This document shows, one piece after another, positions 1,933 through 63,880 of a DNA stretch of 64,000 nt; positions within the stretch are counted from its first letter, which is position 1, and every line of letters begins with the position of its first letter. Where the stretch lies: the IMG/VR virus record IMGVR_UViG_3300027754_000034, positions 124,001 through 188,000 of that record. The stretch is one strand, 5' to 3'. A program made the position numbers and the translations under genes. The notes under the pieces are model-generated. The model saw only the letters and a list, made by a program, of their open reading frames with translations, was not told the DNA's origin and searched no databases.

Positions 1933-3234
1933 TCATGGCGCCTCGAGCGCGCGATCGATCACGGCGTCGCTCCACCTGAGCACGTGCTCGGGGTCGAAAC
2001 AGGCCGCCAGGGCTGCGGGTGTGAGAACCCGCACGACGTCGGGATCGGCCGCTAACAGCGTTTGAAACTCGCCATGCCCTTCGAACGAACGCATTGCCGA
2101 GCGTTGCACGACGACGTAGGCGTCCTGGCGCGCCATGCCCCTGCGGACGAGCTCGAGAAGCACGCCTTCGCTGTAACAGCGTCCGCCCGATAACTCGAGG
2201 TTTCGCAGCATCGTCTCCCCGTAAACGACGAGCCCTTCCGCGAGCCCTGCGGCACGCTCCAGCATGAAGCCGAGGGTTGCGATTGCGTCCGGCGCAATCA
2301 TTCTCTCGACGGACGAATGCGAGATGTCGCGCTCGTGCCAGAGGGCGACATTCTCAAGCGCCGGGATGACTGCCGCCCGCACGACACGCGCGAGGCCGCA
2401 CAGGTTTTCACTTAGGATTGGATTGCGCTTGTGAGGCATTGCGCTCGAGCCTTTTTGGCCGCAGGTGAACGCTTCCTCCGCCTCGGTGACTTCGGTGCGC
2501 TGCCAGTGTCGTACGTTCGTCGCGAGGCGCTCGATCCCTGCGGCTACGAGTGCGAGCGCGGCGAAGAAGGCTGCGTGACGGTCGCGTGCGACGACTTGGG
2601 TGGACACGGTCTCGGGGCGCAGGCCGAGGGTCTCGAGTGCTTTTGCCTCGAGTTCGGGTGAGAGGTGCGCGTAACTGCCGACCGCGCCGGCAAGCTTCCC
2701 GACTGCGATCTCGTCCCGCGCGATTCGCAGTCGATGGCGGCCCCGTTTCAGTTCGGCAAGGTGGCCTGCGAGCACCATGCCGAAACGCAGGGGTTCGGCG
2801 TGGATCCCGTGGCTGCGGCCGATGATCATCGTGTTGCGGTGCTCGTCCGTGCGCTTCGCGAGTGCGGCAATAAGGCGGTCCTGCCGCACGGCGAGGAGGT
2901 CACAGGACTGGACGAGGAGCATCGCGAAGCTCGTGTCGAGCACGTCGCTCGAGGTCATGCCGAAGTGGAGCCAGCGTGCGTCGCTTCCGGCGAGCTCTTC
3001 GACGTGCGTCAAAAATGCGATCACGTCGTGCTTCGTCGTGCGTTCGATCGCATCGATGCGCTCGGGATCGAGCTTGAGCTCTTTTGCGCGAATGTTGGCC
3101 ACGGTTCCAGCGGGGACGACGCCGGCTTCCTCCATGGCCTCACACGCGGCAAGCTCGACGGCCAACCAGGCTCGAAAACGGGTGAGCGGGGACCAAAGCT
3201 CCAGAAATTCGGCAGGAGTGTAGCGGGGGATCAT
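1933..3234 (-). CDS. purB: Adenylosuccinate lyase
   Basis: MIPRY start (ATG 3234), TKHDVIAF, HFGMTSSDV, GRSHGIHAEP, signature GSSAMPHKRNP, ERDISHSSVER; markedly GC-rich. Confidence 0.97.
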   Translation of the reverse strand: MIPRYTPAEFLELWSPLTRFRAWLAVELAACEAMEEAGVVPAGTVANIRAKELKLDPERIDAIERTTKHDVIAFLTHVEELAGSDARWLHFGMTSSDVLDTSFAMLLVQSCDLLAVRQDRLIAALAKRTDEHRNTMIIGRSHGIHAEPLRFGMVLAGHLAELKRGRHRLRIARDEIAVGKLAGAVGSYAHLSPELEAKALETLGLRPETVSTQVVARDRHAAFFAALALVAAGIERLATNVRHWQRTEVTEAEEAFTCGQKGSSAMPHKRNPILSENLCGLARVVRAAVIPALENVALWHERDISHSSVERMIAPDAIATLGFMLERAAGLAEGLVVYGETMLRNLELSGGRCYSEGVLLELVRRGMARQDAYVVVQRSAMRSFEGHGEFQTLLAADPDVVRVLTPAALAACFDPEHVLRWSDAVIDRALEAP

Positions 3235-3407
3235 GGCAGGCGGACGGTGTCCCGCTCCTTCACCGCGACGTCGTGGAACGCTTTGGCACACGCAAGCTCG
3301 GCTTCCAGCAAAACGATTTTCTCGCGTAGGGCGTCACGTTCTTCGACGGCCATAACCGTCTTGCCGCACATCCGTCGAACTAACTCTTGGATGATGTCGT
3401 AACTCAT
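3231..3407 (-). CDS. 58-aa phage-type coiled-coil protein translationally coupled to purB
   Basis: My translation MSYDIIQELVRR...AKAFHDVAVKERDTVRLP*; its TGA overlaps the purB ATG (ATGA). Confidence 0.6.
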   Translation of the reverse strand: MSYDIIQELVRRMCGKTVMAVEERDALREKIVLLEAELACAKAFHDVAVKERDTVRLP

Positions 3408-23902: not shown

Positions 23903-24556
23903 ATGAAGATTTATCCCATAGCCATCCGAATAGCTGGATTGGAGTCATACTTTGATGATATTTGCATCTATGTAGATTTAGATAATACGCTAATATGTGC
24001 CAGAGAAAAAAGTTCTCTGGATGAAGAGGATTTTAAAGAAATATCTGATTCAGGATACGAATACAAAGAAGTGGTAGCAGGGAAAAAATGGATAGTAGGG
24101 TTGAGACCTGGTGCAAAAAGTTTTCTTGAAGCAGTAGGTGAACTTGGTGAAGTCAAGCTATGTACTGCAGCCACTAAACCTTATGCGAATGCCATGCTCA
24201 GAGCATTCGAGTTAACTAGATATTTCAGCGAAATAATAAGCAGAGAGAACTTAGATTCAAACGAAATGAAAGAAAAGTACCCGTGCTCCATACTAGTGGA
24301 CGATTTACCGTCAGGTATGCCAGATATAAAGAGTAAACTAAAAGTTATGGGTATACCGTGGGATAACTCTGAATTCTATCGTAATAATCCTAATGGTGGC
24401 TTATTAGAAGAGCATAAAGCTGAAATGGCTCACCATAAAAACCACCACGTAAATGTGGCGGGTTTTTATGGTGGTATTGATGATGGCGATATTAATTTAA
24501 ATGAAGCTCTTGCAAAAGTAAAAATCGTTCTTGGTCGTATTAATAGAACGATGTAA
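23903..24556 (+). CDS. HAD-family (NIF/FCP1-like) phosphatase with N-terminal 'RIA' leader
   Basis: DLDNTLI, LRPG..FL, CTAA...YA, LVDD. Confidence 0.8.
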   Translation: MKIYPIAIRIAGLESYFDDICIYVDLDNTLICAREKSSLDEEDFKEISDSGYEYKEVVAGKKWIVGLRPGAKSFLEAVGELGEVKLCTAATKPYANAMLRAFELTRYFSEIISRENLDSNEMKEKYPCSILVDDLPSGMPDIKSKLKVMGIPWDNSEFYRNNPNGGLLEEHKAEMAHHKNHHVNVAGFYGGIDDGDINLNEALAKVKIVLGRINRTM

Positions 24557-24896: not shown

Positions 24897-25493
24897 TTGT
24901 TTTTTAACGTGAAACCTCGTGAATTATCAAATGCCCTTCGTCGTATAGCTGCAGCCATAGAGGGTTCTAAAAACCCATCTCGTAAACTTGTAACTGCGGA
25001 TTTAAAAGGGGTTATTTCACGTTTATCTTCTGATAAAATATCAAAAGATAAACTTGAAGAAATTATCAAGCAGCACGCCCTATGGGTCAAAAAAGACCCC
25101 GCAGGGGTGGAGGCGGACCTTAGCGGGATGGACCTTAGCGGGATGGACCTGGAGGGGGCTAACCTGAAGGAGGCTAACCTGAAGGAGGCTAAACTGAAGG
25201 GGGCTAACCTGAAGAGGGCTAACCTGCTTCATGCGGACCTGACCGGGGCGGACCTGACCGGGGCGGACCTGACCAAGGCGGACCTAAGCGGGGCGGACCT
25301 GGACCGGGCGTTCCTGACCGATGCGAATCTGACCGGGGCGCGGCTGGTCAATGCTAACCTGAAGGGGGCTAACCTGGACGGGACGAACGTGCACGATGCG
25401 GACTTTCGTGGGGCGAACCTGAATAATATATCCTTGGACAAAACGAAGGGCAAACCCAAAGAGGAAGGGATGCGAACCTTCGGACGGATCTAA
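24897..25493 (+). CDS. Pentapeptide-repeat protein with N-terminal 'LRRIAA' module
   Basis: ANLKE/ADLTG repeats; out-of-frame repeats continue to about 25540. Confidence 0.85.
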   Translation: MFFNVKPRELSNALRRIAAAIEGSKNPSRKLVTADLKGVISRLSSDKISKDKLEEIIKQHALWVKKDPAGVEADLSGMDLSGMDLEGANLKEANLKEAKLKGANLKRANLLHADLTGADLTGADLTKADLSGADLDRAFLTDANLTGARLVNANLKGANLDGTNVHDADFRGANLNNISLDKTKGKPKEEGMRTFGRI

Positions 25494-29319: not shown

Positions 29320-29498
29320 ACCCTTTATATTTCACCATCATCATCTTCGATTACATAATCGTGATGGGTTAGTTTTATTTTATTCTTGGTGCGTTCTAAA
29401 TCTAAAAGATATAAAGTATATTCTAATGCAGACACTTCTGTTTTTCTCTCTTCTAAGTATTTTCTAACCCTTCCCTCATCCCAGTATTTCATTTCCGG

Positions 29499-29571
29499 CA
29501 CCCCGTACGGGACTTGAACCCATTTACATGATTTGAAAGGACGCTGGCCTGACCGGGTAGTCTAACGGGGT
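29499..29571 (-). pseudogene. Degenerate tRNA-Glu(UUC)
   Basis: Acceptor ACCCCGT/ACGGGGT and T arm intact; anticodon stem GCGTC/ATCAT mostly unpaired. Confidence 0.7.
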
Positions 29572-35429: not shown

Positions 35430-35993
35430 TCATTTATTCAAAAGGTGTCGATTCAGCAAATGCTGAAAAGGGCGGATTTCAAACATGGCTTCCTGAACCA
35501 TTCTCACCCAGGTAGAAGAATGGAAAAAATTGGGTCCAGGTTTTTCCAGGAAATTCCAGAACCCCAGGAAATCGGTATTATGTCCGATTTTCCGATTCAT
35601 CCGGTCGGTCGGATCTACCCAGGGGTTTGTCACCATCCATGATGGTCTGCCTCTTCGAATTTGAAAAAGACAGGGTTCCCAGTCCAATATATGACACATA
35701 CTGGACGAAAATAATATATTATTTCGGTTTAAATCTCCATGCACTAGACCGAAATAATAAGCTAAATCCAAAGATTTGGCTAGGCTGATTTTTTGCCTAG
35801 AGGACAACTCACCATAGTTTATTTTTTCGCCGGGCGAGCGAGAAGATTCCCTTACTACATTATCCTTCAATACAGTAAATTTTACTTGAACAGGAATCCT
35901 GACCGAAATCTTTTCAATCACGGCGATTCTATCTAGAACTTGGTCCCAAGGGCAAAGAAGGTCTTCTCTTTTATAAGATTTTTGGAAGATCAA
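35430..35993 (-). CDS. Protein-kinase-like (APH/PKL) protein
   Basis: VHGDLNRNNILF...ILDWE. Confidence 0.7.
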   Translation of the reverse strand: MIFQKSYKREDLLCPWDQVLDRIAVIEKISVRIPVQVKFTVLKDNVVRESSRSPGEKINYGELSSRQKISLAKSLDLAYYFGLVHGDLNRNNILFSSSMCHILDWEPCLFQIRRGRPSWMVTNPWVDPTDRMNRKIGHNTDFLGFWNFLEKPGPNFFHSSTWVRMVQEAMFEIRPFQHLLNRHLLNK

Positions 35994-38904: not shown

Positions 38905-39112
38905 CAGGAGGACGCAGCGCCCGGTGCAGCTGTCGCTGCGACCGGATCACCGCTCCCTCACACAAGGAGGACGCAGCGCCCGGTGCAGCTGTCGCTGCGA
39001 CCGGATCACCGCTCCCTCACACAAGGAGGACGCAGCGCCCGGGGCAGCTGTCGCTGCGACCGGATCACCCCGTCTCCCTCACAAGGAGGACGCAGCGCCC
39101 GGGGCAGCTGTC
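38905..39112 (-). repeat. Four tandem 59-60 bp repeats, each carrying the promoter motif
   Basis: aggaggacgcagcgcccgg[t/g]gcagctgtc with ggacg at 38910, 38969, 39028, 39088. Confidence 0.9.
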
Positions 39113-40120: not shown

Positions 40121-40528
40121 TCAAGTCATTTGTTCCAACATATCTTGAGCCTTATCGGACATCTCACCTTTACCTTTACCTTTACCTTTTTTCTGGTCTC
40201 TACGGTTTACCTTTTTTAGCTCTTTCTTTTCCTGGTTCACTTGAGTAGTAGTCATTACCGTATTTTGGCTAGGTCGAGCCATATTTTTACATAACGGACA
40301 ATATACACCAGAAGTCTTCACGGTATCCAGGTACACTTGGAAATCAGCGTTACATTTTTCACATTTATAATCCCACAATTTCATAGCAAGTCTTTTTGAC
40401 GTCGCATTCCTAAAATTGTAAGTTTTACCAAGTAACTCGATAGAACGTCGAAATTCATCCATACAAAGGCTCACCATTAAGGGTGTAACCTTCCGAATGG
40501 ATTTAACCGAACACTTCATTCGGACCAT
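40121..40528 (-). CDS. FmdB-like zinc-ribbon protein (true start probably MKLWDYKC)
   Basis: YKCEKC...F...CPLC. Confidence 0.5.
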   Translation of the reverse strand: MVRMKCSVKSIRKVTPLMVSLCMDEFRRSIELLGKTYNFRNATSKRLAMKLWDYKCEKCNADFQVYLDTVKTSGVYCPLCKNMARPSQNTVMTTTQVNQEKKELKKVNRRDQKKGKGKGKGEMSDKAQDMLEQMT

Positions 40529-42179
40529 TCCTGATTCACATGAGTACCAAGAACGTTTAAAATTAGAACTTTCTTGGTTTCGGGGTAGCGCGGCTGAACC
40601 TTATTTATTAACCGTCGCCCAAATATGCAGAGCAACAGTCGATATACCTCGAATTATTCGCGGATCAGCAGGTTCCAGTCTTGTCGTCTACGCCCTCGGG
40701 ATTTCAGACATTGATCCCGTTCATTGGAACATTGAGCCAGAACGGTTCTTCCATCCCCGACGACATTCTCTTCCCGATATCGATTTAGACTTCCCCGACA
40801 ATCGTCGTGACGAAGTCTTCGAACGCATCTACAATTTATTTCCCGGAAGAGCAGCTCGAATCTCTAATCATTCTCAATTTTCCGACGCCGGGTCCATTCG
40901 ACAAGCCGTTCGGTTTCTCGGTTATCGACACCATTTACCCAGTAAATTCCTTCTTTCCGACGTCGTTCCCGGTCTTGAATCTCGCGCCGTCGAAATCGCT
41001 TCAGAGTTACGACACCAAGTCTACAACATATCGCTTCATTGCGGCGGAGTCGTCGTTTTCGACCACCAGGTTCCACCACATCTTCTAACAGATTCCCCCC
41101 GACAAATTCGACTCGATAAGTTGGAAACCGAACATCATCAATTTATGAAAATCGACATTTTATCTAACATTTCGCTCACCCAACTCCACGCAATATCGGA
41201 CGCTCCCTTTTCCTCATATTCTGAAAAGGACGAACTCACATCCCGTCTCTTATCTAGCGGGCGTTCTCTCGGCATCACTCAAGCGGAGTCTCCCGCTTTC
41301 CAGAAGCTCCTTCGAGCACTTCGTCCTAATTCTCTTCCAGACGTCGTTCTCGCTATGGCTCTCATTCGTCCAGCATCCGCTTGGCGAGCCCACAGGCGCG
41401 ATTTTCTTAATCAGTGGCATCAAAATAGAAGAACTTCTCTCATGGTTTATGAGGACGACGCTACGCAGGTAATATCACGCCTCACAGGTTTACCAGGTCC
41501 TGAATCCGATGAAATTCGCCGCGCCTTTATAAATCGTCATCTGGAAATAACCAAAACATTAAGAGACAAATTAGAATTAACAGAAGAAGGTAACGGGATA
41601 ATCCAGGATATAGAGGCTTTTCGCACATTTTCAATGTGCAAGTCTCATTCAGTATCTTACGGGCGAGTTGTATGGGCACTCGCATATCATAAAGCCCACA
41701 ACCCCTCCGCTTTTTGGTTATCCACCATCAACCATGCAAAGTCCATGTGGCGTGATTGGGTGCACATTGAAGAAGCGAAACTGTCAGGACTCGACATAAA
41801 GCCGGGGAAAAAACCCTTCATCCTATCCGGTTCTACTTTATATCCTTCGGGATATACACCAACACTTTTCCTTCCGGATCCCCTTTGGGAGCTTAAAACT
41901 TACGGGATGTGGTCCGGCAATACGTTTCCAGCCGGATGTGGTCACAGTTATGATGAGACTCGAATCTCTTTCAAAGGAATAATCGGTACTTCTCGAATTT
42001 TAAAATCAAAAGATGGAGACGCCACTACATTTGTTACCATTGGGACTTCTCCCGGCGTATACCGCGATCTAATCTTAGAGGGAGCGATCGATACGACTCG
42101 CCGGAACTTTATCGAAGGTACCGGGGATTCGTATGTAACAAATGGGAGTGAATCTGTTAAAGTAACTCATTACGAGTTA

Positions 42180-42185
<6 letters not shown>
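40497..42185 (+). CDS. dnaE: Minimal C-family DNA polymerase (DnaE alpha-like, lacking PHP domain)
   Basis: [49 protein letters not shown]. Confidence 0.88.
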
Positions 42186-43986
<1,801 letters not shown>

Positions 43987-54991: not shown

Positions 54992-56515
54992 ATGATTGAG
55001 TTTTTAGATTCTGAATTTACTCTTAGAGAGTTTGGTTATTCAGTTCCTAAAAGATCAGATGATAAATGCTATGCCAAATGCTCACTTGGGAATCATTCTG
55101 TAATAACCACGTTAAGAGCTTTGAAGAGAACTCTTAAGAAGCGTGGGTTATATAGATGTTCTAAGTGCGTTTCTAACTCAGAAGAAGGCAAGCGACACCG
55201 ATCTTTGCAGGCCATTACTTTATGGTCTAATCCAGAAATAGCAAGTTTGATATCTGAAAAATCTAAGGAGTTAGCGAATAGCGAGAAGGGAAGAGCACAA
55301 CGTTCTCTTCAATCAAAGAAGGCGTGGGAGTCAGAACCCTATTCCAGAGTTCAAAAAGACCGAATCGCTAGTTTATTTAAGTCAGAAGAACATCGTAAAT
55401 TAGTATCTGAACGGAATAAAAAGGATTACCAAGAAAATCCTATTAAATATATTGAAGATAAAGTATCCGCGATGTGGTCGGATGCTGCAAAGAAAAAACA
55501 TAAAGAAGCTCTGGCTAGTCCCGAATATAGAGAAACTCACCGCCAGTTAGCCAAAACCAGGTTTGAAAACGATGAGTATAAAGAAAAAATAGCTAAGGGA
55601 CTAGAAAACTTTCCTCGTGGTGGGAAGATGTCCACGCCGGAAAAGCAGGTAAAAGATATTTTAGAAGCTCTTGTACTAGAGTATGTTTATAACAAGGCGG
55701 TAGGCCCTTATAACTTTGACTTCTATATCGAAAAACTTAACCTATATGTTGAGGTACAAGGTGAATATTGGCACAGTCTACCAAATAACGAAAGACGAGA
55801 TCGGGCTAAGTTTTCATACCTAAGAATGGCTTTTCCAGAAGCCAAATTAATTTATCTGTGGGATTATGATTTTAACTCCGGAAACGCTGAATATAAAATT
55901 CGAGAAGCATTAGGGTTATCCCTTAATTCAGCAATCGAGTTTAAGTTCTCAGAATGTTCATTGAGAACAGTTAATTCAACTGAGGCTAAGCCGTTTCTTA
56001 ACAGCTGGCATTACGCGCAATATGGAAAGGCTGCTAAATTTCTCTATGGTGTTTATTTAAACGAGTTATTAATATCAGTTTGCAAAATTGGTCCGGTGAG
56101 CCGTAAAGAAGTCGCTTCGTCAGAAGGATTCACTCCTAAAGAATGCTTCGAACTTGATAGGTTCTGCATTCACCCTTTTTATCATAAGAAAAACCTCGGG
56201 TCTTTTCTATTGAGCCGATCGGTAAAAACTTTCTTTAATGAATTTCCGCAATCTAAAGCATTAGTTAGCTTTTCTGATTCTACCTTCGGGCATGAGGGAA
56301 CTATTTATCGAGCTAGTAATTGGACGGAAGTCAGAAAAGTAAAACCTGATTACATTTATGTGGCTTCTGATGGATGGATTTTACATAAGAAAACCCTATA
56401 TAATCAAGCCGTTTCGGTACATATGACCGAAACGGCTTATGCTTCTAAGCATGGTTATAAAAAAGTATTCGGAAAAGAAAAAACGAAATTCATCACCAAA
56501 CGCTCATGTCGATAA
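54992..56515 (+). CDS. Fusion: helical repeats, DUF559/Vsr-like endonuclease and Mom-like (GNAT) domain
   Basis: S.PE...FDFYI...VEVQGEYWH...RD..K; FL..WHY, ELDRFC, SFLLSRS, LVSFSD...GHEGTIYRASNW. Confidence 0.78.
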   Translation: MIEFLDSEFTLREFGYSVPKRSDDKCYAKCSLGNHSVITTLRALKRTLKKRGLYRCSKCVSNSEEGKRHRSLQAITLWSNPEIASLISEKSKELANSEKGRAQRSLQSKKAWESEPYSRVQKDRIASLFKSEEHRKLVSERNKKDYQENPIKYIEDKVSAMWSDAAKKKHKEALASPEYRETHRQLAKTRFENDEYKEKIAKGLENFPRGGKMSTPEKQVKDILEALVLEYVYNKAVGPYNFDFYIEKLNLYVEVQGEYWHSLPNNERRDRAKFSYLRMAFPEAKLIYLWDYDFNSGNAEYKIREALGLSLNSAIEFKFSECSLRTVNSTEAKPFLNSWHYAQYGKAAKFLYGVYLNELLISVCKIGPVSRKEVASSEGFTPKECFELDRFCIHPFYHKKNLGSFLLSRSVKTFFNEFPQSKALVSFSDSTFGHEGTIYRASNWTEVRKVKPDYIYVASDGWILHKKTLYNQAVSVHMTETAYASKHGYKKVFGKEKTKFITKRSCR

Positions 56516-57710
56516 TATCATCATGAACTGCCCCTGTTCCTATTAGGATAACAGGCACCCCAGCAGTTTCTTCTACTTTGTTAATGAAATCGCGGGATTC
56601 TTTAGAAAGACTCTTTAGAGCCTCCTTTCCTCCACGAATCCCATTATCATTCCAGTTTAGATATTGAACGAAGTTCACCGAGATCTTGGTAACCCCGTTT
56701 ACGCGAACGGCGTCTTCCAAGCCTATCCAAGAAAATGTAGAAACTCGTCGAATACGTTTTGTAACTGTTGTACGCTCGCGTTCTGCTAGTTTTTCTGCCT
56801 CTTCTTTAGGCATTCCCGCGTTTTTTGCTACTTGATCCCAGGTCAGCTCTTTACAATCATCGTAAAAGCCTCCTGAATACCCCTTCTGCTCTCCGTCATC
56901 CTCCACCACATTGCCTACGCGGATTGGGTAGGAGCGAAGATTCAGCCAAACATCACCCAGCATACTGGGAGGTACCGCCATGTAGTCCATAGCGGCTTGC
57001 AGGGTGCAGTTCCGACTCGTGCAGAATGGATAATGAGACCCATGGTCTATTGACAGTGCATAACCTTGGCTTCCTTCATGGAGCCAAGTATTACCTTCAT
57101 TAATCAATGAATGCGTGAGATTCCGAAATTCCATGGCAGACACCACCTGAATTTTCTCAAGTGCTTCTGCAATCCCGTTTTCTCCAATATATTTTTGGCA
57201 TTCCGAATCAGATGAAAGCAAGTCTGAGAACACATCTTCTAACTTGCGAGAAGCCACCACTGAGGCGTTTGGCTTTCGAAGAATCTTATCAGACAAAGCC
57301 GTTCCTGATCCCTGCATCGTGGAGGCAATGTGTTTGGTGGACTCCATACCATCTCGCTCACGAGAGGCATGTTCATCTGTCACATAAAGAGCTCGATCAT
57401 GAATGAAGAGACGAGGATTGCCACATTCATGCCATTCCTTCAAAAGCTGCTTCGGGGCAAATCCGGAACCTGGGCTTACAAATCCCACCATTCCAATCCC
57501 ATTCACCTTCTTAAGGATCAGAGCCGTTGGAATGGCCTTGGATACGAATTTTGTTCCATCTGCAAATATGGCGGAGTGACCGGCATTCGGAAGATTCGCG
57601 GAGGAGACGTTCACCACCCCATATTTATCAGCCAGGTATGTTGATATCTTTCCTTTCCCACTCGATCCCCACGCCTGATCCAAAATTACGTTAAATTTAC
57701 CGTTCTTCAA
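56493..57710 (-). CDS. purZ: PurZ-like 2-aminodeoxyadenylosuccinate synthetase (PurA paralog)
   Basis: WGSSGKGK (Ser where PurA has catalytic Asp13), PNAGH, EGSQG, YPIRVG (Ile, not Thr), TTVTK, NFVQY (not TKLD); TTG start with GGAGG. Confidence 0.8.
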   Translation of the reverse strand: MKNGKFNVILDQAWGSSGKGKISTYLADKYGVVNVSSANLPNAGHSAIFADGTKFVSKAIPTALILKKVNGIGMVGFVSPGSGFAPKQLLKEWHECGNPRLFIHDRALYVTDEHASRERDGMESTKHIASTMQGSGTALSDKILRKPNASVVASRKLEDVFSDLLSSDSECQKYIGENGIAEALEKIQVVSAMEFRNLTHSLINEGNTWLHEGSQGYALSIDHGSHYPFCTSRNCTLQAAMDYMAVPPSMLGDVWLNLRSYPIRVGNVVEDDGEQKGYSGGFYDDCKELTWDQVAKNAGMPKEEAEKLAERERTTVTKRIRRVSTFSWIGLEDAVRVNGVTKISVNFVQYLNWNDNGIRGGKEALKSLSKESRDFINKVEETAGVPVILIGTGAVHDDIIDMSVW

Positions 57711-58507: not shown

Positions 58508-58865
58508 AAACTGTATAGTTTTAGCACAGAAGACAGACTCTGGGTACTTTACCCAATGGGATTAAATTACTTACTCGAAAAATTAATTTAATCCTAGCCT
58601 AATAAGGGAGCGGTTTTAAACCAGGAAGACCTAAGAAAAAAATAGGATCATCAGAATCGAGATTTTTCTGATTATCTGAAAATAAAGCATCTCATGATCC
58701 TTTATTTTCTTTTTCTTTTTTTGATCTGATCTTTTGTTAATTGAAATGAAATGGAAATGAACAAAGTAGATTCCTTCGTAGCAGGACACCCAGAGAAGGT
58801 AGAAGAGAAGTCAGTGAAGAAGAACGCCAAGTAAGTAGAACGCCAAGTAAGTAGAAGATTTAGAA

Positions 58866-59135
58866 ATGAAAGATTTTATTATAAGTAAAGAAGAGGGGAT
58901 ATTTCCTACTTTCTTTATTTTTATGGATCTTCCGAAGCATCTAGAGTATAGAGTGCAAAATATGCCCCTTTTAAAAGAAGGTATGATCGTTGATTTTAAT
59001 CTAAACATCAATGATCTTAGGTCTTTTAGACATCCCAAGATTATTAAGGGTAACCATATAATAAATAAATGTGTTTTCAAATATGGGGGAAAAAGGCCCG
59101 GTTTGGTGCAGTATGTGGAGTGGAAAGCTATTTAA
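58866..59135 (+). CDS. Hypothetical protein
   Basis: ORF track. Confidence 0.5.
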   Translation: MKDFIISKEEGIFPTFFIFMDLPKHLEYRVQNMPLLKEGMIVDFNLNINDLRSFRHPKIIKGNHIINKCVFKYGGKRPGLVQYVEWKAI

Positions 59136-59552
59136 AATTTATGAAACTTATGTAGGATAGTATTAAATAAAAATATTTATTGTGTAAATTGTATATGAGA
59201 AAGTATCCTCTTATATAAAGGGTCAATTTACGAAAAAATATTTAAATCACTATTCATTGAAGGGGGTCTACACACGAGAGCGTCACTTCTCTGGGATTCG
59301 CTGGTTATTTTCCTAAATGAAAGAATGGTGTGCCAATATGCTGAAGACTGGGGTATATGGGAAAGGAGCAGTGGGGAGAAATTTTATGAAAATTTGGCGA
59401 AAATTCTTATGCTTGTTTAGTATTTACTGAACAGATATTTACTTTACTATTGACTTTAAAAGAGGGCTATGTTAGACCTCTTTTATCCGATGTTGATCGG
59501 TTCTAACCATAACTCCGATAAGTCGGCGTAGCATTCGCCGCATGGGGACTAC

Positions 59553-60851
59553 ATGAATTCTGAAAAAGCCGATATTTCGGCAAGTTCTTCTGTGCGTGTC
59601 ATTATTCCTACAACTTCGGAATTTTTGACTAAATGGAATGCCTGGATTCACGGCAAAGTGAGCAAGCATTATAAGCGAGATAAAGAAAGAATCCCTGACA
59701 CTGCTCAAAGGGTAAGGCTTCGTTTACTCTCCAAGGATTTCATTTCTCGTTGGTTTTTTAAACATCTCACTGACGATCTCGTTGATCTGTCAGAGGCAAT
59801 CAGTATGACTGGCAATCCTAGGATTAATTTTTCACCTAGGATTAGCCCAGTTCATGGGGGTCGCAAAGATCCTAATTCTCTTTGGAGAATTTCAGATATT
59901 CTGAATTTCAGTAATTTTGATTATGAAAGGTATTTTTATAGTACTCAGAATCACACTATAGAGACTGATAAATTTCTTCGTTTATTGGGTTACGGATCTA
60001 AAAGTACTGTTACAGGTAAGTGGGAAATAAACACCGAGGATTATAGTGTACTGGAGTCATTATATCGACAAGGTAGAATCAAACCTGCTGAACTTACGGA
60101 ACATACTTGTTCAGAATCTAACATCAAGAAGAATTCTGACGGAACATGTTTAGTAGGTGGTTGTTCAGAAAAGCATTTTAGCAAGGGTTATTGTAAACCT
60201 CATTATAGAAGTACTCGCGCCAATGCATGTTCTGAATGTGAAAAAGGAAGAAATGTACTCAAAAGTAAGGGTATTTCTCTTGCTCATAGATGGAATGACC
60301 CTGAAGTAATAAAGTCTGTTTCGAAGCTTCGTTGGAACGATTCTCAGCTGGTTCCATTCTTGCGGGATTGGAAAAGTGGAAATCTTATTAAGCATCCACC
60401 TCGCTACATTATGAGAAAGCCTTCTGAGGCTACGGTGGATGCTGGATTACTCAAATACGCTAATATGGTGATTGATAATGACGTTTTCAATCATTTTAAG
60501 AGTATGATCAGATCGGATGATGTCTCTTACATCTCATTAGATATAAAATCTGACCCTGATGGGTCTACATTTGAGAAAATGTATTGGGAGACTAGTGAAG
60601 AAGGTTCAGGAAGAACAGCAGTATTTATCGATCATAACGCTCAAAATGAATTTATTGTGACTGAAGACAGATATACTATTATTTCATTAATAAGAAAGGC
60701 GAATTTAACACAGATTGAAGAGAATATCATCAAATTTGTGGATCTAGAAGAGTCTACCATATCTGAAGTAGCAGATAAATTAGGACTAGCCCCGGCTAAA
60801 ATTAATAAAATTCGTTTAAACGCTATGAATAAAATAAGAAGTTTAGCTTAA
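59553..60851 (+). CDS. ECF-like sigma factor with large Zn-finger-containing insertion in region 2
   Basis: DTAQ (DxxQ of sigma2.2), LLKYANMVIDNDVFNHFK (sigma2.3/2.4-like), LTQIEENII...TISEVADKLGLAPAKINKIRLNAMNKIR (sigma4). Confidence 0.65.
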   Translation: MNSEKADISASSSVRVIIPTTSEFLTKWNAWIHGKVSKHYKRDKERIPDTAQRVRLRLLSKDFISRWFFKHLTDDLVDLSEAISMTGNPRINFSPRISPVHGGRKDPNSLWRISDILNFSNFDYERYFYSTQNHTIETDKFLRLLGYGSKSTVTGKWEINTEDYSVLESLYRQGRIKPAELTEHTCSESNIKKNSDGTCLVGGCSEKHFSKGYCKPHYRSTRANACSECEKGRNVLKSKGISLAHRWNDPEVIKSVSKLRWNDSQLVPFLRDWKSGNLIKHPPRYIMRKPSEATVDAGLLKYANMVIDNDVFNHFKSMIRSDDVSYISLDIKSDPDGSTFEKMYWETSEEGSGRTAVFIDHNAQNEFIVTEDRYTIISLIRKANLTQIEENIIKFVDLEESTISEVADKLGLAPAKINKIRLNAMNKIRSLA

Positions 60852-60879: not shown

Positions 60880-63183
60880 ATGAATACTCGTATATCTGCT
60901 GCGGAGATCATCCATCTTTATAGAACCAGAATAGCGTCACTAGAGGATGATTTAGGAAATCGAGTAAGATTGTACCTGGAATCGAAATTTCCAGGTACAA
61001 ATATCGAATTATCACCTAAGCGAATAGGTGTCAGATTATATAAGATACTTAGCCAAAATACTAAAAGTGATATCGATACACTAATTGAATCACTATTTGA
61101 AAAGTTAGAGTCCAAATCTTTAAGTGCGAATGATGTGGACGAAGCATATGCGAATCTAATAACGGTTGCTAAGGGAGTGGCCTCTGGCGCGACGTCTTCC
61201 AAGGATCCCGTTCAGAAAAGTACAAAGACCTCCATCCCGGAGATCGATACAGATGCTATTAAGGCCAGAGATTTCGGAAATTCTCTAATCGCTGTCCTAC
61301 AAAGGAATTCATTTTTAGGGGAATTCGCTAATGATTCTCCAGAATCTATAGGCAGAAGATTAATATCGATTGCAAAGTATCAGTTGGCAGGGAATTTACA
61401 AAAGGCATATGATGCCATACAGGATTTACTGAAGTATTATGTAACTTCCGATTATGACTTTACGAAAAGAGCAGACAATATAAATCAGGCAATATTAAAA
61501 GTATTTGGAGATTTAAAAAGTAGATCGATGTCGCGCTCTAAATCTGAGCGTCAATATAAGCACAAGAGTGATATAGACGAGATGTCTGCACTGTTGTGGA
61601 AAAAGAATAAAGTAGAATCAAAATCACTGTTCAAAGGAATTCCAATAAAATGGACAAGTAAAGATGAACAGAGATTTAGGAGTTTAGGCGAAAAACTGAA
61701 GGGTGATGGAATAGATAGTTCTATCATAACTCCAAAGCCTCCAGATATGACTTCGGAGCGCAAAGAAGAATTCGCAGAGGAAGCATTTGGGACTCGTTCA
61801 GATAGTGGAGTATCTGAGGGAGGGATTGATAAAATACCGGAGGGGGCTCAAAAGTTTCTAGAAATAGGCGATGCTGAGGTAGATACTTTAAGTGGGGAAA
61901 AGCATTTCATAAAAATACTTCAGAGTCATTTTCCTGAAATTAAATCAACACTGGATGATAAAGAAAAATTATTATTTGAATTAATTGTAGAACAGGGATC
62001 AGGGTTTTACAATTCAGCGAAGGAAATAAAGAAAAAGGATGGTACTACGGAGATCGTAGAATCAAAGAAAAAATGGTCAGGGAGTTTGCTTCCTGGCGAA
62101 GAACATAATATGAATTTAGGAGGGGCATGGAAAGAAGCATGTCTGCTCGAAAATCCGACTTGGGTATCTTGGTATCAAGACAGACCTGGTCGGTTAACAA
62201 AATTACGAGAAGTTCTCTTAGATAAGATTCAGAGCTATCTCGATAATAAATTACCTAAAGAAGATTACGAGGTATTGTACTCAACATGGAATACTTCTGG
62301 TGGTAAGGTAATAGATAAAGATTTAGAAAGATTTCAATATGAAAGAGGTCGCTTAGAAAGGAAAAAACAAAAATTAGAGGAGAGTATAACGACCAGAGGT
62401 CTTTCTCCTCAAGAGGAAGCAGAAATTGAGCGTTATAACGATAAATTCATTTTAGAAGATGAATATGGTAAACTAAAGTACTATGATGATATTAGGGAAT
62501 TAACTCATAAAGAAGAACGGAGGTTAGAGGAACTGCCGTTACTTTTAAAGAAATATAATGTAAATCTTAATAGTATACCCAAGATTCCACCTAAGACGCC
62601 GACACCAGTGGAACATCTAATGTGGCTTAATAAATTAGAAGACACAAGAGCGTTAACTCCTTCTTTAGATATTCTGATGGATAAGGTATATGATGAAGTG
62701 TTGGATATGTTCGATGGGAAGGGGTCAATAGTCCGTTCCATAATTTCGGAAATGCCTTCTTCTTCGAATCTGTCTCTATTAAATTCGATGGCGAAGGGAT
62801 TACAAAAAGTACGAGAAGAGAAAGTACGAATAAAGGATCTTCCTGCTCAGAAGGAAAAAGAATCCGAGAATGGATCAAGAGATTTTGAAGATTCAGAAGA
62901 AGACTCGGTAAAGAAAGAATCCATTAAAAAAATTAAAGATATGCTTGCTCAAATCAAGCGAGCTGTTCCCCTAAAATATCTAGATCTCTTGAATGATGTA
63001 AAAGCATTTGCAGATGGAAACCCTCCATCTAGACTCCGAGATAAGAATTTTTGGAAGGATCTGGAGCCCAGTGACTTTCGAGATATTTTAAATGCAATAC
63101 CTGGAGCGAATCAATTATTAGAAGAATCTTTAGGTGTCAAAAAGGCGTCATACCTAGAACGGATTGCACTAAGTATCATGTAA
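60880..63183 (+). CDS. Large protein with degenerate sigma2/sigma4-like segments and terminal 'RIA' motifs
   Basis: RRLISIAKYQLAGNLQKAYDAIQD; LDDKEKLLFEL; N-terminal YRTRIAS, C-terminal KKASYLERIA. Confidence 0.45.
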   Translation: MNTRISAAEIIHLYRTRIASLEDDLGNRVRLYLESKFPGTNIELSPKRIGVRLYKILSQNTKSDIDTLIESLFEKLESKSLSANDVDEAYANLITVAKGVASGATSSKDPVQKSTKTSIPEIDTDAIKARDFGNSLIAVLQRNSFLGEFANDSPESIGRRLISIAKYQLAGNLQKAYDAIQDLLKYYVTSDYDFTKRADNINQAILKVFGDLKSRSMSRSKSERQYKHKSDIDEMSALLWKKNKVESKSLFKGIPIKWTSKDEQRFRSLGEKLKGDGIDSSIITPKPPDMTSERKEEFAEEAFGTRSDSGVSEGGIDKIPEGAQKFLEIGDAEVDTLSGEKHFIKILQSHFPEIKSTLDDKEKLLFELIVEQGSGFYNSAKEIKKKDGTTEIVESKKKWSGSLLPGEEHNMNLGGAWKEACLLENPTWVSWYQDRPGRLTKLREVLLDKIQSYLDNKLPKEDYEVLYSTWNTSGGKVIDKDLERFQYERGRLERKKQKLEESITTRGLSPQEEAEIERYNDKFILEDEYGKLKYYDDIRELTHKEERRLEELPLLLKKYNVNLNSIPKIPPKTPTPVEHLMWLNKLEDTRALTPSLDILMDKVYDEVLDMFDGKGSIVRSIISEMPSSSNLSLLNSMAKGLQKVREEKVRIKDLPAQKEKESENGSRDFEDSEEDSVKKESIKKIKDMLAQIKRAVPLKYLDLLNDVKAFADGNPPSRLRDKNFWKDLEPSDFRDILNAIPGANQLLEESLGVKKASYLERIALSIM

Positions 63184-63184
63184 A

Positions 63185-63514
63185 ATGGATGGAAGTTCAA
63201 AAAATAGTGTAGTAGATGGTGTTTTATTCAGACCCGTATCCTTGTCATATGCCCTATCTGAATTTCCTGTATTAATATATGACATGATTTGTAGAAGAGT
63301 TCATATAAACCCAATATCTACTGCAAATGGTTTATATGGAGTAAAGATATTTGGCCGCAATAATAAAATATGGACTCTGAGAACTGAAGATTATGATAAG
63401 TGTCTTAATATCACAAGAAAATTCAGTTCATCCGCTCTTTTTCCTTCTTCTATTGAATCTACTCTAGAAATTGTAAAAAGTTTCATCTCTGTTGAATTTG
63501 CAGGTAGAGTATGA
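63185..63514 (+). CDS. Hypothetical protein
   Basis: ORF track. Confidence 0.45.
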   Translation: MDGSSKNSVVDGVLFRPVSLSYALSEFPVLIYDMICRRVHINPISTANGLYGVKIFGRNNKIWTLRTEDYDKCLNITRKFSSSALFPSSIESTLEIVKSFISVEFAGRV

Positions 63515-63701
63515 CATGAAGAATAAAGAAGAAGTATTTGTAGTTTGTAAGCGTGGTAAAGACAATGCTACTGCTGGTCAGCATTGTTCAAGCAACCTTG
63601 CATATAAGATGTCGGAGGATGGATCTCATTCAGTAATATTCAGGTGTGTAAAGTGTAGCTACCAATGGAGCACTCCTATTGGTGGTTCTGTTAGTTTATG
63701 A
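63492..63701 (+). CDS. Zinc-ribbon protein (TFIIS/RNAP-subunit-like)
   Basis: CKR...C...IFRCVKCSYQW. Confidence 0.55.
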   Translation: MNLQVEYDMKNKEEVFVVCKRGKDNATAGQHCSSNLAYKMSEDGSHSVIFRCVKCSYQWSTPIGGSVSL

Positions 63702-63880
63702 TATTTTTTTGCCCGGATTGTAACAGCAAACTAGATCAGTCTGCGTTTCCGGGTAAATTATACTGCAATCTTTGTGATTGTAATTTCTCATTGGAGATTA
63801 AATTTATAAAAGAAAATAATGAACACTCTTTATATAGGAAACAAACATGCGCAAGAATTGACGAGAAGAGTAATAGATGA
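63698..63880 (+). CDS. Small zinc-ribbon protein
   Basis: CPDC...LYCNLC. Confidence 0.45.
   Translation: MIFFCPDCNSKLDQSAFPGKLYCNLCDCNFSLEIKFIKENNEHSLYRKQTCARIDEKSNR

What the first reader, a model, noticed from the sequence alone, without database searches (positions are those of the whole stretch)
60880..63183. Second, larger sigma-like protein that may be virion-packaged
Seen: RRLISIAKYQLAGNLQKAYDAIQD resembles ECF sigma2.1-2.2 (A-x-D-x-x-Q-D) and LDDKEKLLFEL resembles the start of sigma4. The protein has 'RIA' motifs at both ends, like the proteins in the RIA-leader finding. Inference: an injected sigma could explain how non-sigma70 early promoters fire right after infection. The similarity is weak and judged by eye.
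Basis: inference. Interest (0 to 1): 0.6.

Follow-up and report, generated by a model that had tools for sequence, protein, structure and literature searches.

The report
Divergent sigma-like protein of huge phage
This 767-residue gene of an uncultivated freshwater huge phage folds like a two-domain (ECF-type) bacterial sigma factor although no sequence family recognises it, so the phage probably uses it to redirect the host RNA polymerase; nothing yet shows that it is carried inside the virion.

Summary
Pfam, PHROGs, NCBIfam, PDB sequences and GenBank phages give nothing. An exhaustive HMMER search found 34 relatives, all in phage-like contigs with the same gene order. An AlphaFold2 model built on that alignment (pLDDT 82-84) has an N-terminal four-helix domain and a helix-turn-helix domain. 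In an unbiased search of 48,161 PDB chains these match sigma-2 and sigma-4 of ECF sigma factors first (SigK Z 7.2; sigmaE region 4 Z 5.9, 69/69 residues). The Z values are modest, but sigma factors fill the top of every list. The 'RIA' motifs at both ends are also conserved in the family, and the motif is enriched at protein termini in this genome. The gene lies in an operon with a second sigma-like gene and replication genes, not in the head module. Most likely it is a sigma made after infection. The injected-sigma idea is untested and less likely (about 0.1). A sigma2/beta' docking test gave no verdict.

The parts
60880..63183 (+). Whole gene, 767 aa (P0001). It belongs to a 35-representative family seen only in uncultivated phage-like contigs.
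60880..60996 (+). N-terminal leader, aa 1-39, with RIA at aa 17-19 (nt 60928-60936). It corresponds to the family-wide N-terminal 'RIA.S[IV]RLILAMFRL.A.IE..FG' segment.
60997..61254 (+). N-terminal insertion, aa 40-125, present only in the long members (P0001, P0003, P0004, P0006). It was not modelled.
   Evidence: alignment occupancy about 10%
61255..61551 (+). Sigma-2-like four-helix domain, aa 126-224, pI 9.65. It contains the region 2.1-2.2-like stretch aa 159-182 (nt 61354-61425) with the conserved A176-x-D178-x-x-Q181-D182.
   Evidence: pLDDT 91-98. SigK sigma-2 Z 7.2, rmsd 3.5, 77 aa, model 12-99 = aa 136-223. SigW Z 6.0-6.2. Column counts; pI.
61552..61761 (+). Structured insertion, aa 225-294 (two helices plus short strands), confidently modelled. 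About 40-60% of family members have residues here, and the sequence is not conserved.
61762..61845 (+). Conserved acidic, glycine-rich linker, aa 295-322 (family consensus IDEAFG.R.E.GG.PEGGE). It stands where sigma region 3.2 or the ECF linker would be. That role is inferred, not shown.
   Evidence: pI 4.4 for aa 296-380; pLDDT 57-72
61903..62262 (+). Sigma-4-like helix-turn-helix domain, aa 342-461. LDDKEKLLFEL (aa 358-368, nt 61951-61983) is its region 4.1-like helix. A low-confidence loop insertion spans aa 379-409.
   Evidence: sigmaE region 4 on -35 DNA (2h27_D) Z 5.9, 69/69 aa, model 218-336; SigR region 4 Z 5.7, 65/65 aa, rmsd 2.4; SigD4, WhiG, SigF, BldN Z 5.6-5.7. The only hhalign pairing is this helix with sigma 4.1, and it is not significant.
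62299..62499 (+). Antiparallel coiled-coil hairpin, aa 474-540.
   Evidence: First model, residues 355-421; generic coiled-coil matches at Z 8-9.6
62500..63180 (+). Variable C-terminal extension, aa 541-767, shared with P0003 (34% identity over aa 513-738). It ends in the conserved C-terminal motif ...LERIALSIM (RIA at nt 63160-63168).
59553..60851 (+). Upstream partner gene (P0002, 432 aa), a second divergent sigma-like protein with a sigma-4 C-terminus and an HNH-type zinc-finger insert. It lies upstream of the family gene in the relatives examined; in one lineage an HNH gene sits between them.
   Evidence: Pfam Sigma70_r4 18 bits, below cut-off; hhalign against sigma-4 79.8%, E 1.5e-5; synteny
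63185..63880 (+). Small downstream genes. Relatives keep a 107-114 aa protein followed by a 62-67 aa one; here the ORFs are 109 aa, 69 aa (cysteine pairs) and 60 aa (cysteine pairs). The first starts 2 nt after the P0001 stop. Clamp-loader genes follow.

Best explanation
P0001 is a very divergent member of the sigma-70 superfamily with the two-domain (sigma-2 / linker / sigma-4) architecture of ECF sigma factors. It is enlarged by an N-terminal leader and insertion, a structured insertion after sigma-2, a loop in sigma-4, a coiled-coil hairpin and a long C-terminal tail. It is made after infection, co-transcribed with a second sigma-like gene (P0002) and the replication genes. It then binds the host core RNA polymerase through its region-2.2-like helix and directs it to a class of phage promoters, as one step in a multi-sigma cascade (the fragment holds at least three more sigma-like genes and no RNA polymerase subunit). 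Shown: the gene, its family, the synteny, the predicted fold and the conservation of the motifs. Inferred: binding to RNA polymerase, promoter recognition and timing.
For: Fold: the AF2 models have pLDDT 82.3 and 84.3. In the exhaustive VIA search of 48,161 chains only 29 reach Z>=5, and 23 of the top 30 rows are sigma factors or sigma-like domains; most of these match one domain only, sigma-2 to aa 136-223 or sigma-4 to aa 342-460, and the full-length sigma chains span both in the N-to-C order of a sigma. 45 of 50 rows in the second look are sigma chains. 6 of 10 ESM-Atlas rows are Sigma70_r2/r4_2 clusters. Phage sigma factors appear among the weak BFVD rows. Sequence bridge: family member P0019 aa 62-182 hits TIGR02937 sigma70-ECF (E 4.4e-3) and SigH_actino (4.6e-4), both below cut-off, and its 'NDAEDLVQEFF' aligns with P0001 'QKAYDAIQDLL'. 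P0009 also gives weak sigma hits. A-x-D-x-x-Q-[DE] is kept in 29-34 of 35 members. Charge pattern: both domains are basic and the linker is acidic. Context: the neighbour P0002 has a sigma-4 C-terminus. The genome also has a canonical sigma-70 gene (P0037), a Sigma70_r2 frame at C1:83700 and a protein with two region-4 hits. No beta or beta' was found. The gene order is conserved in 6 independent contexts whose GC runs from 40% to 64%. A start 2 nt after the stop couples it to the downstream replication genes.
Against: No single structural match reaches Z 8, the level below which helical folds can match by common arrangement (tool notes). All Foldseek E-values are above 0.05. P0001 itself has no Pfam, NCBIfam, PHROG or PDB-sequence hit. 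The profile-profile comparison with a sigma-70 alignment gives probability 0.3%. The P0001 subclade has lost the family's 'TW...SN' residues in the region 2.3/2.4-like helix and carries a 30-residue loop inside sigma-4. The docking test of the sigma-2-like domain against E. coli beta' 240-340 gave no verdict, which counts neither for nor against. The host is unknown, and no promoter could be assigned to this protein.
Confidence: 0.55

Rival explanations
1. The sigma-like protein is packed into the capsid through its RIA-type leader, is injected with the DNA, and switches on non-sigma-70 early promoters before any phage protein is made.
For: RIA-type motifs are strongly enriched at protein termini in this genome and are conserved at both ends of the family. 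Carriers include head-module proteins: the portal (RIA at aa 36), the 590-aa protein after the portal, a Lys/Pro/Ala-rich 100-aa protein, and a 166-aa protein four genes downstream of the major head protein. Several leaders continue with [IL]E, like the T4 prohead-protease site (my knowledge, not tested). The window holds 21 same-strand copies of a 'TGACA-N16-CGTCT' motif with ECF-like geometry, which would need a non-sigma-70 factor.
Against: The gene lies in a replication-gene operon about 30 kb from the head genes. No known capsid-targeting sequence was matched. A motif at both termini, and on non-structural proteins such as a pentapeptide-repeat protein, does not look like a cleaved N-terminal leader. 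Nothing shows that the 21 promoters are early, or that this protein reads them. A sigma made early from a host-type promoter explains the same facts. No packaged sigma factor came up in the papers I searched.
Confidence: 0.1
2. It is derived from a sigma but does not act as one. It would be a decoy or regulator that binds RNA polymerase, a host sigma or an anti-sigma (as the sigma-like domain of PhyR does) without recognising promoters. Alternatively it is one half of a two-protein factor with P0002.
For: The PhyR sigma-like domain is among the matches (3t0y_C, Z 5.0). The P0001 subclade has lost residues conserved elsewhere in the region 2.3/2.4-like helix. It has a loop insertion in the helix-turn-helix and large extra domains. 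It is invariably paired with P0002.
Against: Both DNA-facing domains remain basic, and the region 4.2-like helix keeps R443 in 32 of 35 members. The whole sigma-2/linker/sigma-4 layout is conserved across phages that differ widely in GC.
Confidence: 0.2
3. It is not a transcription protein. It would be a helical DNA-binding protein of the replication module (an initiator or loader type) whose helical bundle and helix-turn-helix resemble sigma only by common arrangement.
For: It sits directly upstream of the clamp-loader, RNR and RecD2 genes. A DnaD domain (Z 5.2), DdrC (Z 5.1-6.0; Foldseek probability 0.96 with E 0.5-0.7) and designed helical repeats (Z 7.0) score in the same range as sigma.
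Against: These alternatives each cover one domain only and are isolated rows, whereas dozens of different sigma factors match both domains in order. A family member hits ECF sigma models at the homologous position. The neighbour is also sigma-like.
Confidence: 0.12

Closest known systems
ECF (group 4) sigma factors, e.g. M. tuberculosis SigK/SigL/SigH, B. subtilis SigW, E. coli sigmaE
   Same: Two-domain sigma-2 / linker / sigma-4 layout with no sigma-3. They give the best structural matches for both domains. The region 2.2 motif is A-x-D-x-x-Q-[DE]. The DNA-binding domains are basic and the linker is acidic.
   Different: P0001 has 767 aa against about 170-200 and no detectable sequence-family membership. 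It has an extra N-terminal leader, a structured insertion after sigma-2, a loop in sigma-4, a coiled-coil hairpin and a roughly 230-aa tail. It is encoded by a phage with no anti-sigma partner identified.
ECF sigma factors with regulatory C-terminal extensions (ECF41/42 type, SigJ 5xe7)
   Same: A sigma-2/sigma-4 core followed by a large C-terminal domain. SigJ is a top structural match for sigma-2 (Z 6.0).
   Different: The extension here is a coiled coil plus an unalignable tail that ends in a conserved short motif, not a SnoaL-like or TPR domain. Any regulatory role is only a guess.
Phage-encoded sigma factors: phiEco32 gp36 (9m7y_F), SPO1 gp28/gp34, T4 gp55 with gp33
   Same: Phage proteins that replace the host sigma on host core polymerase in a temporal cascade. 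phiEco32 gp36 matches both domains (Z 4.8; PMC12276001). SPO1 and T4 use pairs of proteins (my knowledge), which recalls the P0002/P0001 pair.
   Different: Those proteins are small (about 110-260 aa) and most are recognisable by sequence. No sliding-clamp gene was found here to support T4-style clamp tethering (the record is only 60% complete).
Virion-packaged transcription or takeover proteins: N4 and phiKZ virion RNA polymerases, T4 Alt and internal proteins with a capsid-targeting sequence (my knowledge)
   Same: A short terminal peptide is shared by several proteins, some of them in the head module.
   Different: None of them is a sigma factor. Packaging of P0001 is not shown, and the RIA motif matches no known targeting sequence.

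Membership tests
Sigma-70 superfamily (ECF-type, two-domain) | Sigma-2 domain fold (helical bundle of regions 2.1-2.4) | tested here: met
   aa 136-223 match SigK sigma-2 at Z 7.2 (rmsd 3.5, 77 aa), the first of 48,161 chains. SigJ, SigW, SigR-N, RpoE, CnrH and sigmaE region 2 match at Z 5.1-6.0. The Z values are modest; the weight lies in sigma factors dominating the list.
Sigma-70 superfamily (ECF-type, two-domain) | Sigma-4 helix-turn-helix domain fold | tested here: met
   aa 342-460 match sigmaE region 4 on -35 DNA at Z 5.9 (69/69 aa) and SigR region 4 at Z 5.7 (65/65 aa, rmsd 2.4). SigD4, WhiG, SigF and BldN also match.
Sigma-70 superfamily (ECF-type, two-domain) | Domain order sigma-2, then linker, then sigma-4, in one chain | tested here: met
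   Full-length ECF and group 1-3 sigma chains align to model residues of about 10-338 in the same order (SigL 13-177, Tth sigmaA 192-421).
Sigma-70 superfamily (ECF-type, two-domain) | Significant match to the sequence models Sigma70_r2 / Sigma70_r4 / r4_2 / TIGR02937 | tested here: not met
   P0001 has no hit. Of 35 members only P0019 (E 4.4e-3, 16.7 bits against a cut-off of 42.9) and P0009 (E 0.05) give sub-threshold hits. hhalign of the family against a sigma-70 alignment gives probability 0.3%.
Sigma-70 superfamily (ECF-type, two-domain) | Region 2.2 core-binding helix motif (D-x-x-Q-E/D) | tested here: met
   D178 is kept in 34/35, Q181 in 31/35 and D/E182 in 29/35. The motif aligns with the canonical AEDLVQE of member P0019.
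Sigma-70 superfamily (ECF-type, two-domain) | Binds the beta' clamp helices of core RNA polymerase | tested here: inconclusive
   The predicted complex with RPOC_ECOLI 240-340 scored 0.28 against a mark of 0.32, so there is no verdict. The host is unknown.
Sigma-70 superfamily (ECF-type, two-domain) | Confers promoter-specific initiation | not testable with these tools
   This needs in vitro transcription or in vivo mapping.
Capsid-targeted, injected phage proteins (T4 IP/Alt type) | N-terminal targeting leader shared with other packaged proteins | tested here: inconclusive
   The RIA-type motif is enriched at termini and is present on some head-module proteins. It also occurs at C-termini and on non-structural proteins, and matches no known leader.
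Capsid-targeted, injected phage proteins (T4 IP/Alt type) | Gene expressed with or located in the late/structural module | tested here: not met
   The gene is in the replication block at C1:183.5-216 kb, while the head genes are at 216.5-232 kb. Expression timing was not measured.
Capsid-targeted, injected phage proteins (T4 IP/Alt type) | Present in purified virions | not testable with these tools
   There is no isolate and no proteome. Only freshwater metagenome DNA runs hold the sequence.

The most novel reading that the evidence does not exclude
The sigma-like protein is loaded into the capsid through the RIA-type terminal peptide it shares with head-module proteins. It is injected with the genome and at once programmes host RNA polymerase to fire the 21 'TGACA-N16-CGTCT' promoters of the 32-kb minus-strand block. 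This would be the first virion-delivered sigma factor, and the first case of a short peptide 'address' reused across a huge phage's cargo proteins.
Probability: 0.1. Interest if true: 0.85.

Novelty: new variant of a known kind. Interest (0 to 1): 0.52.

Why it matters
Huge phages without their own RNA polymerase must reprogramme the host enzyme, yet most of their regulators are invisible to sequence annotation. This family is found only in uncultivated phage-like contigs and always sits beside a second cryptic sigma-like gene. It shows that such phages can carry more sigma-type factors than annotation reports: at least five in this fragment. It also provides a conserved marker gene pair for the lineage. 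The terminal RIA peptide and the 21 ECF-type promoters in the same window give concrete handles for experiments on how the infection programme starts, which can be attempted once a host or a cell-free system is available.

Tried and rejected
These searches with P0001 returned nothing: Pfam, PHROGs and NCBIfam; tblastn of P0001, P0029 and P0022 against 50,697 GenBank phages; the word-index protein search (self only); the IMG/VR peptide-pattern scan; phmmer and a family profile against PDB sequences.

ESM Atlas by features gave no usable hit, and its own single-sequence model is poor (pLDDT 0.48), so its structure rows are meaningless.

hhalign of the family against a 20-sequence sigma-70 alignment was not significant, and the family against the P0002 family was not significant either.

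The first 421-residue model was swamped by coiled-coil matches in the wide search. I therefore re-modelled the protein without the hairpin.

Complex prediction of the sigma-2-like domain with E. coli beta' 240-340 gave no verdict (0.28 against 0.32). This is evidence neither way.

The apparent duplication of the first two sigma-2 helices at the N-terminus, seen by eye and in MAFFT, is not supported by BLASTP.

T4-style clamp tethering was considered, but no DnaN-type clamp was found in the 257-kb fragment. That is inconclusive, because the record is only 60% complete.

PHROGs on ten RIA-bearing proteins gave no virion annotation.

The promoter motif was sought in the relatives' loci and not found, but those loci cover only the replication module.

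I did not use read laying. No alternative genetic code was used: code 11 gives 90% coding density.
Full report
WHAT IS THERE

The window is bases 124,001-188,000 of a 257,205-bp IMG/VR virus record that CheckV rates 60% complete. The sequence is held by freshwater metagenomes.

Under the standard bacterial code my simple ORF set covers 90% of the record, and TGA is the commonest stop, so no other code was considered.

The finding's coordinates are exactly one ORF: 60880-63183 on the + strand, 767 aa (P0001). RRLISIAKYQLAGNLQKAYDAIQD is aa 159-182, LDDKEKLLFEL is aa 358-368, and RIA occurs at aa 17-19 and 761-763.

RELATIVES

These searches gave nothing:
- Pfam, PHROGs and NCBIfam
- PDB sequences
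- GenBank phages by tblastn, also with two relatives as queries
- the word-index protein search
- an IMG/VR pattern scan

The family scans and the word search left the protein open, so I used the exhaustive HMMER search. It found 34 other cluster representatives among 1.84 billion proteins, with E-values from 8e-51 to 5e-4.

The shared core is aa ~125-226, 295-380 and 408-530. P0001 adds:
- an N-terminal insertion (aa ~40-125)
- an insertion at aa 227-294
- a loop at aa 379-409
- a tail shared with P0003

Compact members have only 355-420 aa.

Six independent genomic contexts, with GC from 40% to 64%, have the same gene order:
1. a 430-570-aa protein
2. sometimes an HNH gene
3. the family member
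4. a ~108-aa protein
5. a ~62-67-aa protein
6. clamp loader delta', then delta
7. ribonucleotide reductase

One of them lies on a 381,746-bp contig. So this is a conserved gene of a lineage of uncultivated huge phages.

FOLD

An AlphaFold2 model of aa 120-540, built on the 35-sequence alignment, has mean pLDDT 82.3. Foldseek found nothing at E<=1e-3, but well over half of its first 50 rows were sigma-factor chains. The unbiased VIA search was swamped by the C-terminal coiled-coil hairpin.

I therefore re-modelled aa 125-462 without the hairpin (pLDDT 84.3). All 48,161 PDB representatives were aligned to this model, and only 29 reach Z>=5. The list is headed by sigma factors:
- SigK sigma-2: Z 7.2, rmsd 3.5, 77 aa, covering aa 136-223
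- SigL: Z 6.6, spanning both domains
- SigJ: Z 6.0
- sigmaE region 4 bound to -35 DNA: Z 5.9, all 69 residues, covering aa 342-460
- SigR region 4: Z 5.7, 65/65 residues, rmsd 2.4
- then SigW, sigmaH, AlgU, SigD4, WhiG, SigF, BldN, sigma-32, RpoE, CnrH, SigG1 and PhyR

In the second look, 45 of 50 rows are sigma chains aligned N-terminal domain to sigma-2 and C-terminal domain to sigma-4. 6 of 10 ESM-Atlas rows are Sigma70_r2/r4_2 clusters. Phage sigma factors appear among the weak BFVD rows.

Each Z is modest. The tool's own notes warn that Z below 8 can be a common helical arrangement. The argument rests instead on three things: two separate domains both pick sigma domains first, they do so in the right order, and four libraries agree.

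The helix QKAYDAIQDLLKYY is the third helix of the sigma-2-like domain. That is the position of region 2.2, which in real sigma factors contacts the beta' clamp helices (established knowledge). A176, D178, Q181 and D/E182 are kept in 31, 34, 31 and 29 of 35 members.

In member P0019 the same columns read NDAEDLVQEFF. P0019 aa 62-182 hits TIGR02937 sigma70-ECF (E 4.4e-3) and SigH_actino (E 4.6e-4), both below cut-off. P0009 also gives weak sigma hits.

LDDKEKLLFEL is the first helix of the sigma-4-like domain. It is the only pairing hhalign makes with a sigma-70 alignment (with LSQKEQLVL of region 4.1), but that pairing is not significant (probability 0.3%).

Between the two domains lies a conserved acidic, glycine-rich stretch (IDEAFG.R.E.GG.PEGGE). 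The two domains are basic and the linker is acidic (pI 9.65 for aa 126-232, 8.9 for aa 411-460, 4.4 for aa 296-380). This is what one expects of a sigma, but it proves nothing.

Against full function, the P0001 subclade has replaced the family's 'TW...SN' in the region 2.3/2.4-like helix and has a 30-residue loop in sigma-4.

A docking test of the sigma-2-like domain on E. coli beta' 240-340 gave no verdict. I do not count it either way.

CONTEXT

The upstream gene P0002 (59553-60851) is the 'first' sigma-like protein. Its C-terminus matches sigma-4 (Pfam 18 bits, below cut-off; hhalign 79.8%, E 1.5e-5). It carries an HNH-type zinc-finger insert.

The record also encodes:
- a canonical sigma-70-family protein with regions 2 and 4 (P0037)
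- a frame with Sigma70_r2 at C1:83700
- a 271-aa protein with two region-4 hits

No beta or beta' subunit was found in the fragment.

P0001 is followed 2 nt after its stop by the next gene, and then by clamp loader, RNR, RecD2, Mom/HNH, SbcCD-like and exonuclease genes. The terminase, portal, head protease and major head protein lie at C1:216.5-232 kb.

The plain reading is a phage sigma made after infection, within a multi-sigma cascade.

THE RIA MOTIF AND THE PACKAGING IDEA

N-termini share RIA.S[IV]RLILAMFRL.A.IE, and C-termini share [IV]A.R[IV]A close to the end, in phages of very different GC. It is therefore a peptide signal, not a nucleotide one.

In this genome the motif is enriched, above all near termini. 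It occurs on several head-module proteins:
- the portal
- the 590-aa protein after the portal
- a Lys/Pro/Ala-rich 100-aa protein
- a 166-aa protein four genes downstream of the major head protein

It also occurs on others, such as a pentapeptide-repeat protein.

This is compatible with a capsid address. It is equally compatible with any shared docking or degradation signal, or with an intramolecular regulatory helix. None of the tests I could run decides this.

The window also holds 21 copies of (T/C)GACA(G/A)(T/C)(C/T)G-N9-10-C(G/T)GCGTCT. All are on the minus strand between 7,105 and 39,088, and four stand in tandem at the upstream end. The 'TGACA-N16-CGTCT' geometry is like ECF promoters (my knowledge).

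Nothing links them to P0001 rather than to another phage or host sigma, and nothing shows they are early. Injection therefore stays a low-probability reading (about 0.1), though a testable one.

COMPARISON AND NOVELTY

P0001 works like, and most probably descends from, ECF-type sigma factors. It passes the fold, order and region 2.2 tests and fails the sequence-model test, so I file it as a new variant of a known kind.

The closest phage analogue in the structure lists is phiEco32 gp36 (Z 4.8; PMC12276001). A survey of jumbo phages describes minimal and RpoD-like phage sigma factors and gp33, but nothing of this size or architecture and no packaged sigma (PMC7824862).

Noticed in passing
window 7105-39088, minus strand (genome 131,105-163,088): 21 copies of a GC-rich promoter-like motif, (T/C)GACA(G/A)(T/C)(C/T)G-N9-10-C(G/T)GCGTCT followed by TCCTGGTG. 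This is 'TGACA'-N16-'CGTCT', an ECF-like geometry. All are on one strand, and about half (12 of 21) lie 6-131 nt upstream of a minus-strand ORF. Four tandem copies 59-60 bp apart lie at 38,910-39,088. None lies before P0002 or P0001.
   Followed up: partly
whole record; in the window e.g. 23903-24556 (+), 24897-25493 (+), 35430-35993 (-): A short peptide R[IV]A[SAGF].[ILVM] is enriched near protein termini (8 against 0.45 in shuffles). Carriers include head-module proteins and a pentapeptide-repeat protein. Two paralogous leaders read LRRIA[AS]AIE[GN]S[KE]NPSR.
   Followed up: partly
window 59553-60851 (+): P0002 is a second divergent sigma-like protein. Its C-terminus matches sigma-4 (hhalign 79.8%, E 1.5e-5). 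An HNH-type zinc finger is inserted at aa 198-225; in one relative it is absent and a separate HNH gene follows instead.
   Followed up: partly
window 58508-59552: About 1 kb of non-coding DNA lies at the switch from the minus-strand to the plus-strand gene block. It contains TTTACTTTAC 113 nt before P0002. The octamer TACTTTAC recurs close upstream of several other genes.
   Followed up: no
window 56493-57710 (-), 1933-3291 (-), 54992-56515 (+): The window holds an adenylosuccinate-synthetase-family gene, an adenylosuccinate lyase at 63% GC in a 35-50% GC genome (63% identical to a Myxococcales MAG, about 55% to Alphaproteobacteria), and Mom-family genes. This could be a purine or DNA-modification module. 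PurZ membership was not tested.
   Followed up: no
window 29497-29571 (-): ARAGORN calls a tRNA with anticodon TCA here, as tRNA-SeC, and Rfam scores it only 30.5 bits. The standard code gives 90% coding density and TGA is the most frequent stop, so there is no sign of recoding.
   Followed up: partly
window 40497-42185 (+) and 42180-43967 (-): A 562-aa DNA polymerase III alpha fragment (NTPase and finger domains only) lies next to a 595-aa collagen-repeat protein.
   Followed up: no
genome C1:104435-105421 (-), C1:83700-83894 (+), C1:206102-206917 (+): There are three further sigma-type genes outside the window: a canonical sigma-70-family protein (regions 2 and 4), a frame with Sigma70_r2, and a 271-aa protein with two region-4 matches. 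No RNA polymerase subunit was found in the fragment.
   Followed up: partly
loci L008, L009, L015 (relatives): The ribonucleotide reductase downstream of the family gene carries intein/LAGLIDADG insertions in relatives. The adenylosuccinate-synthetase gene of one relative carries a Hint/LAGLIDADG insertion.
   Followed up: no
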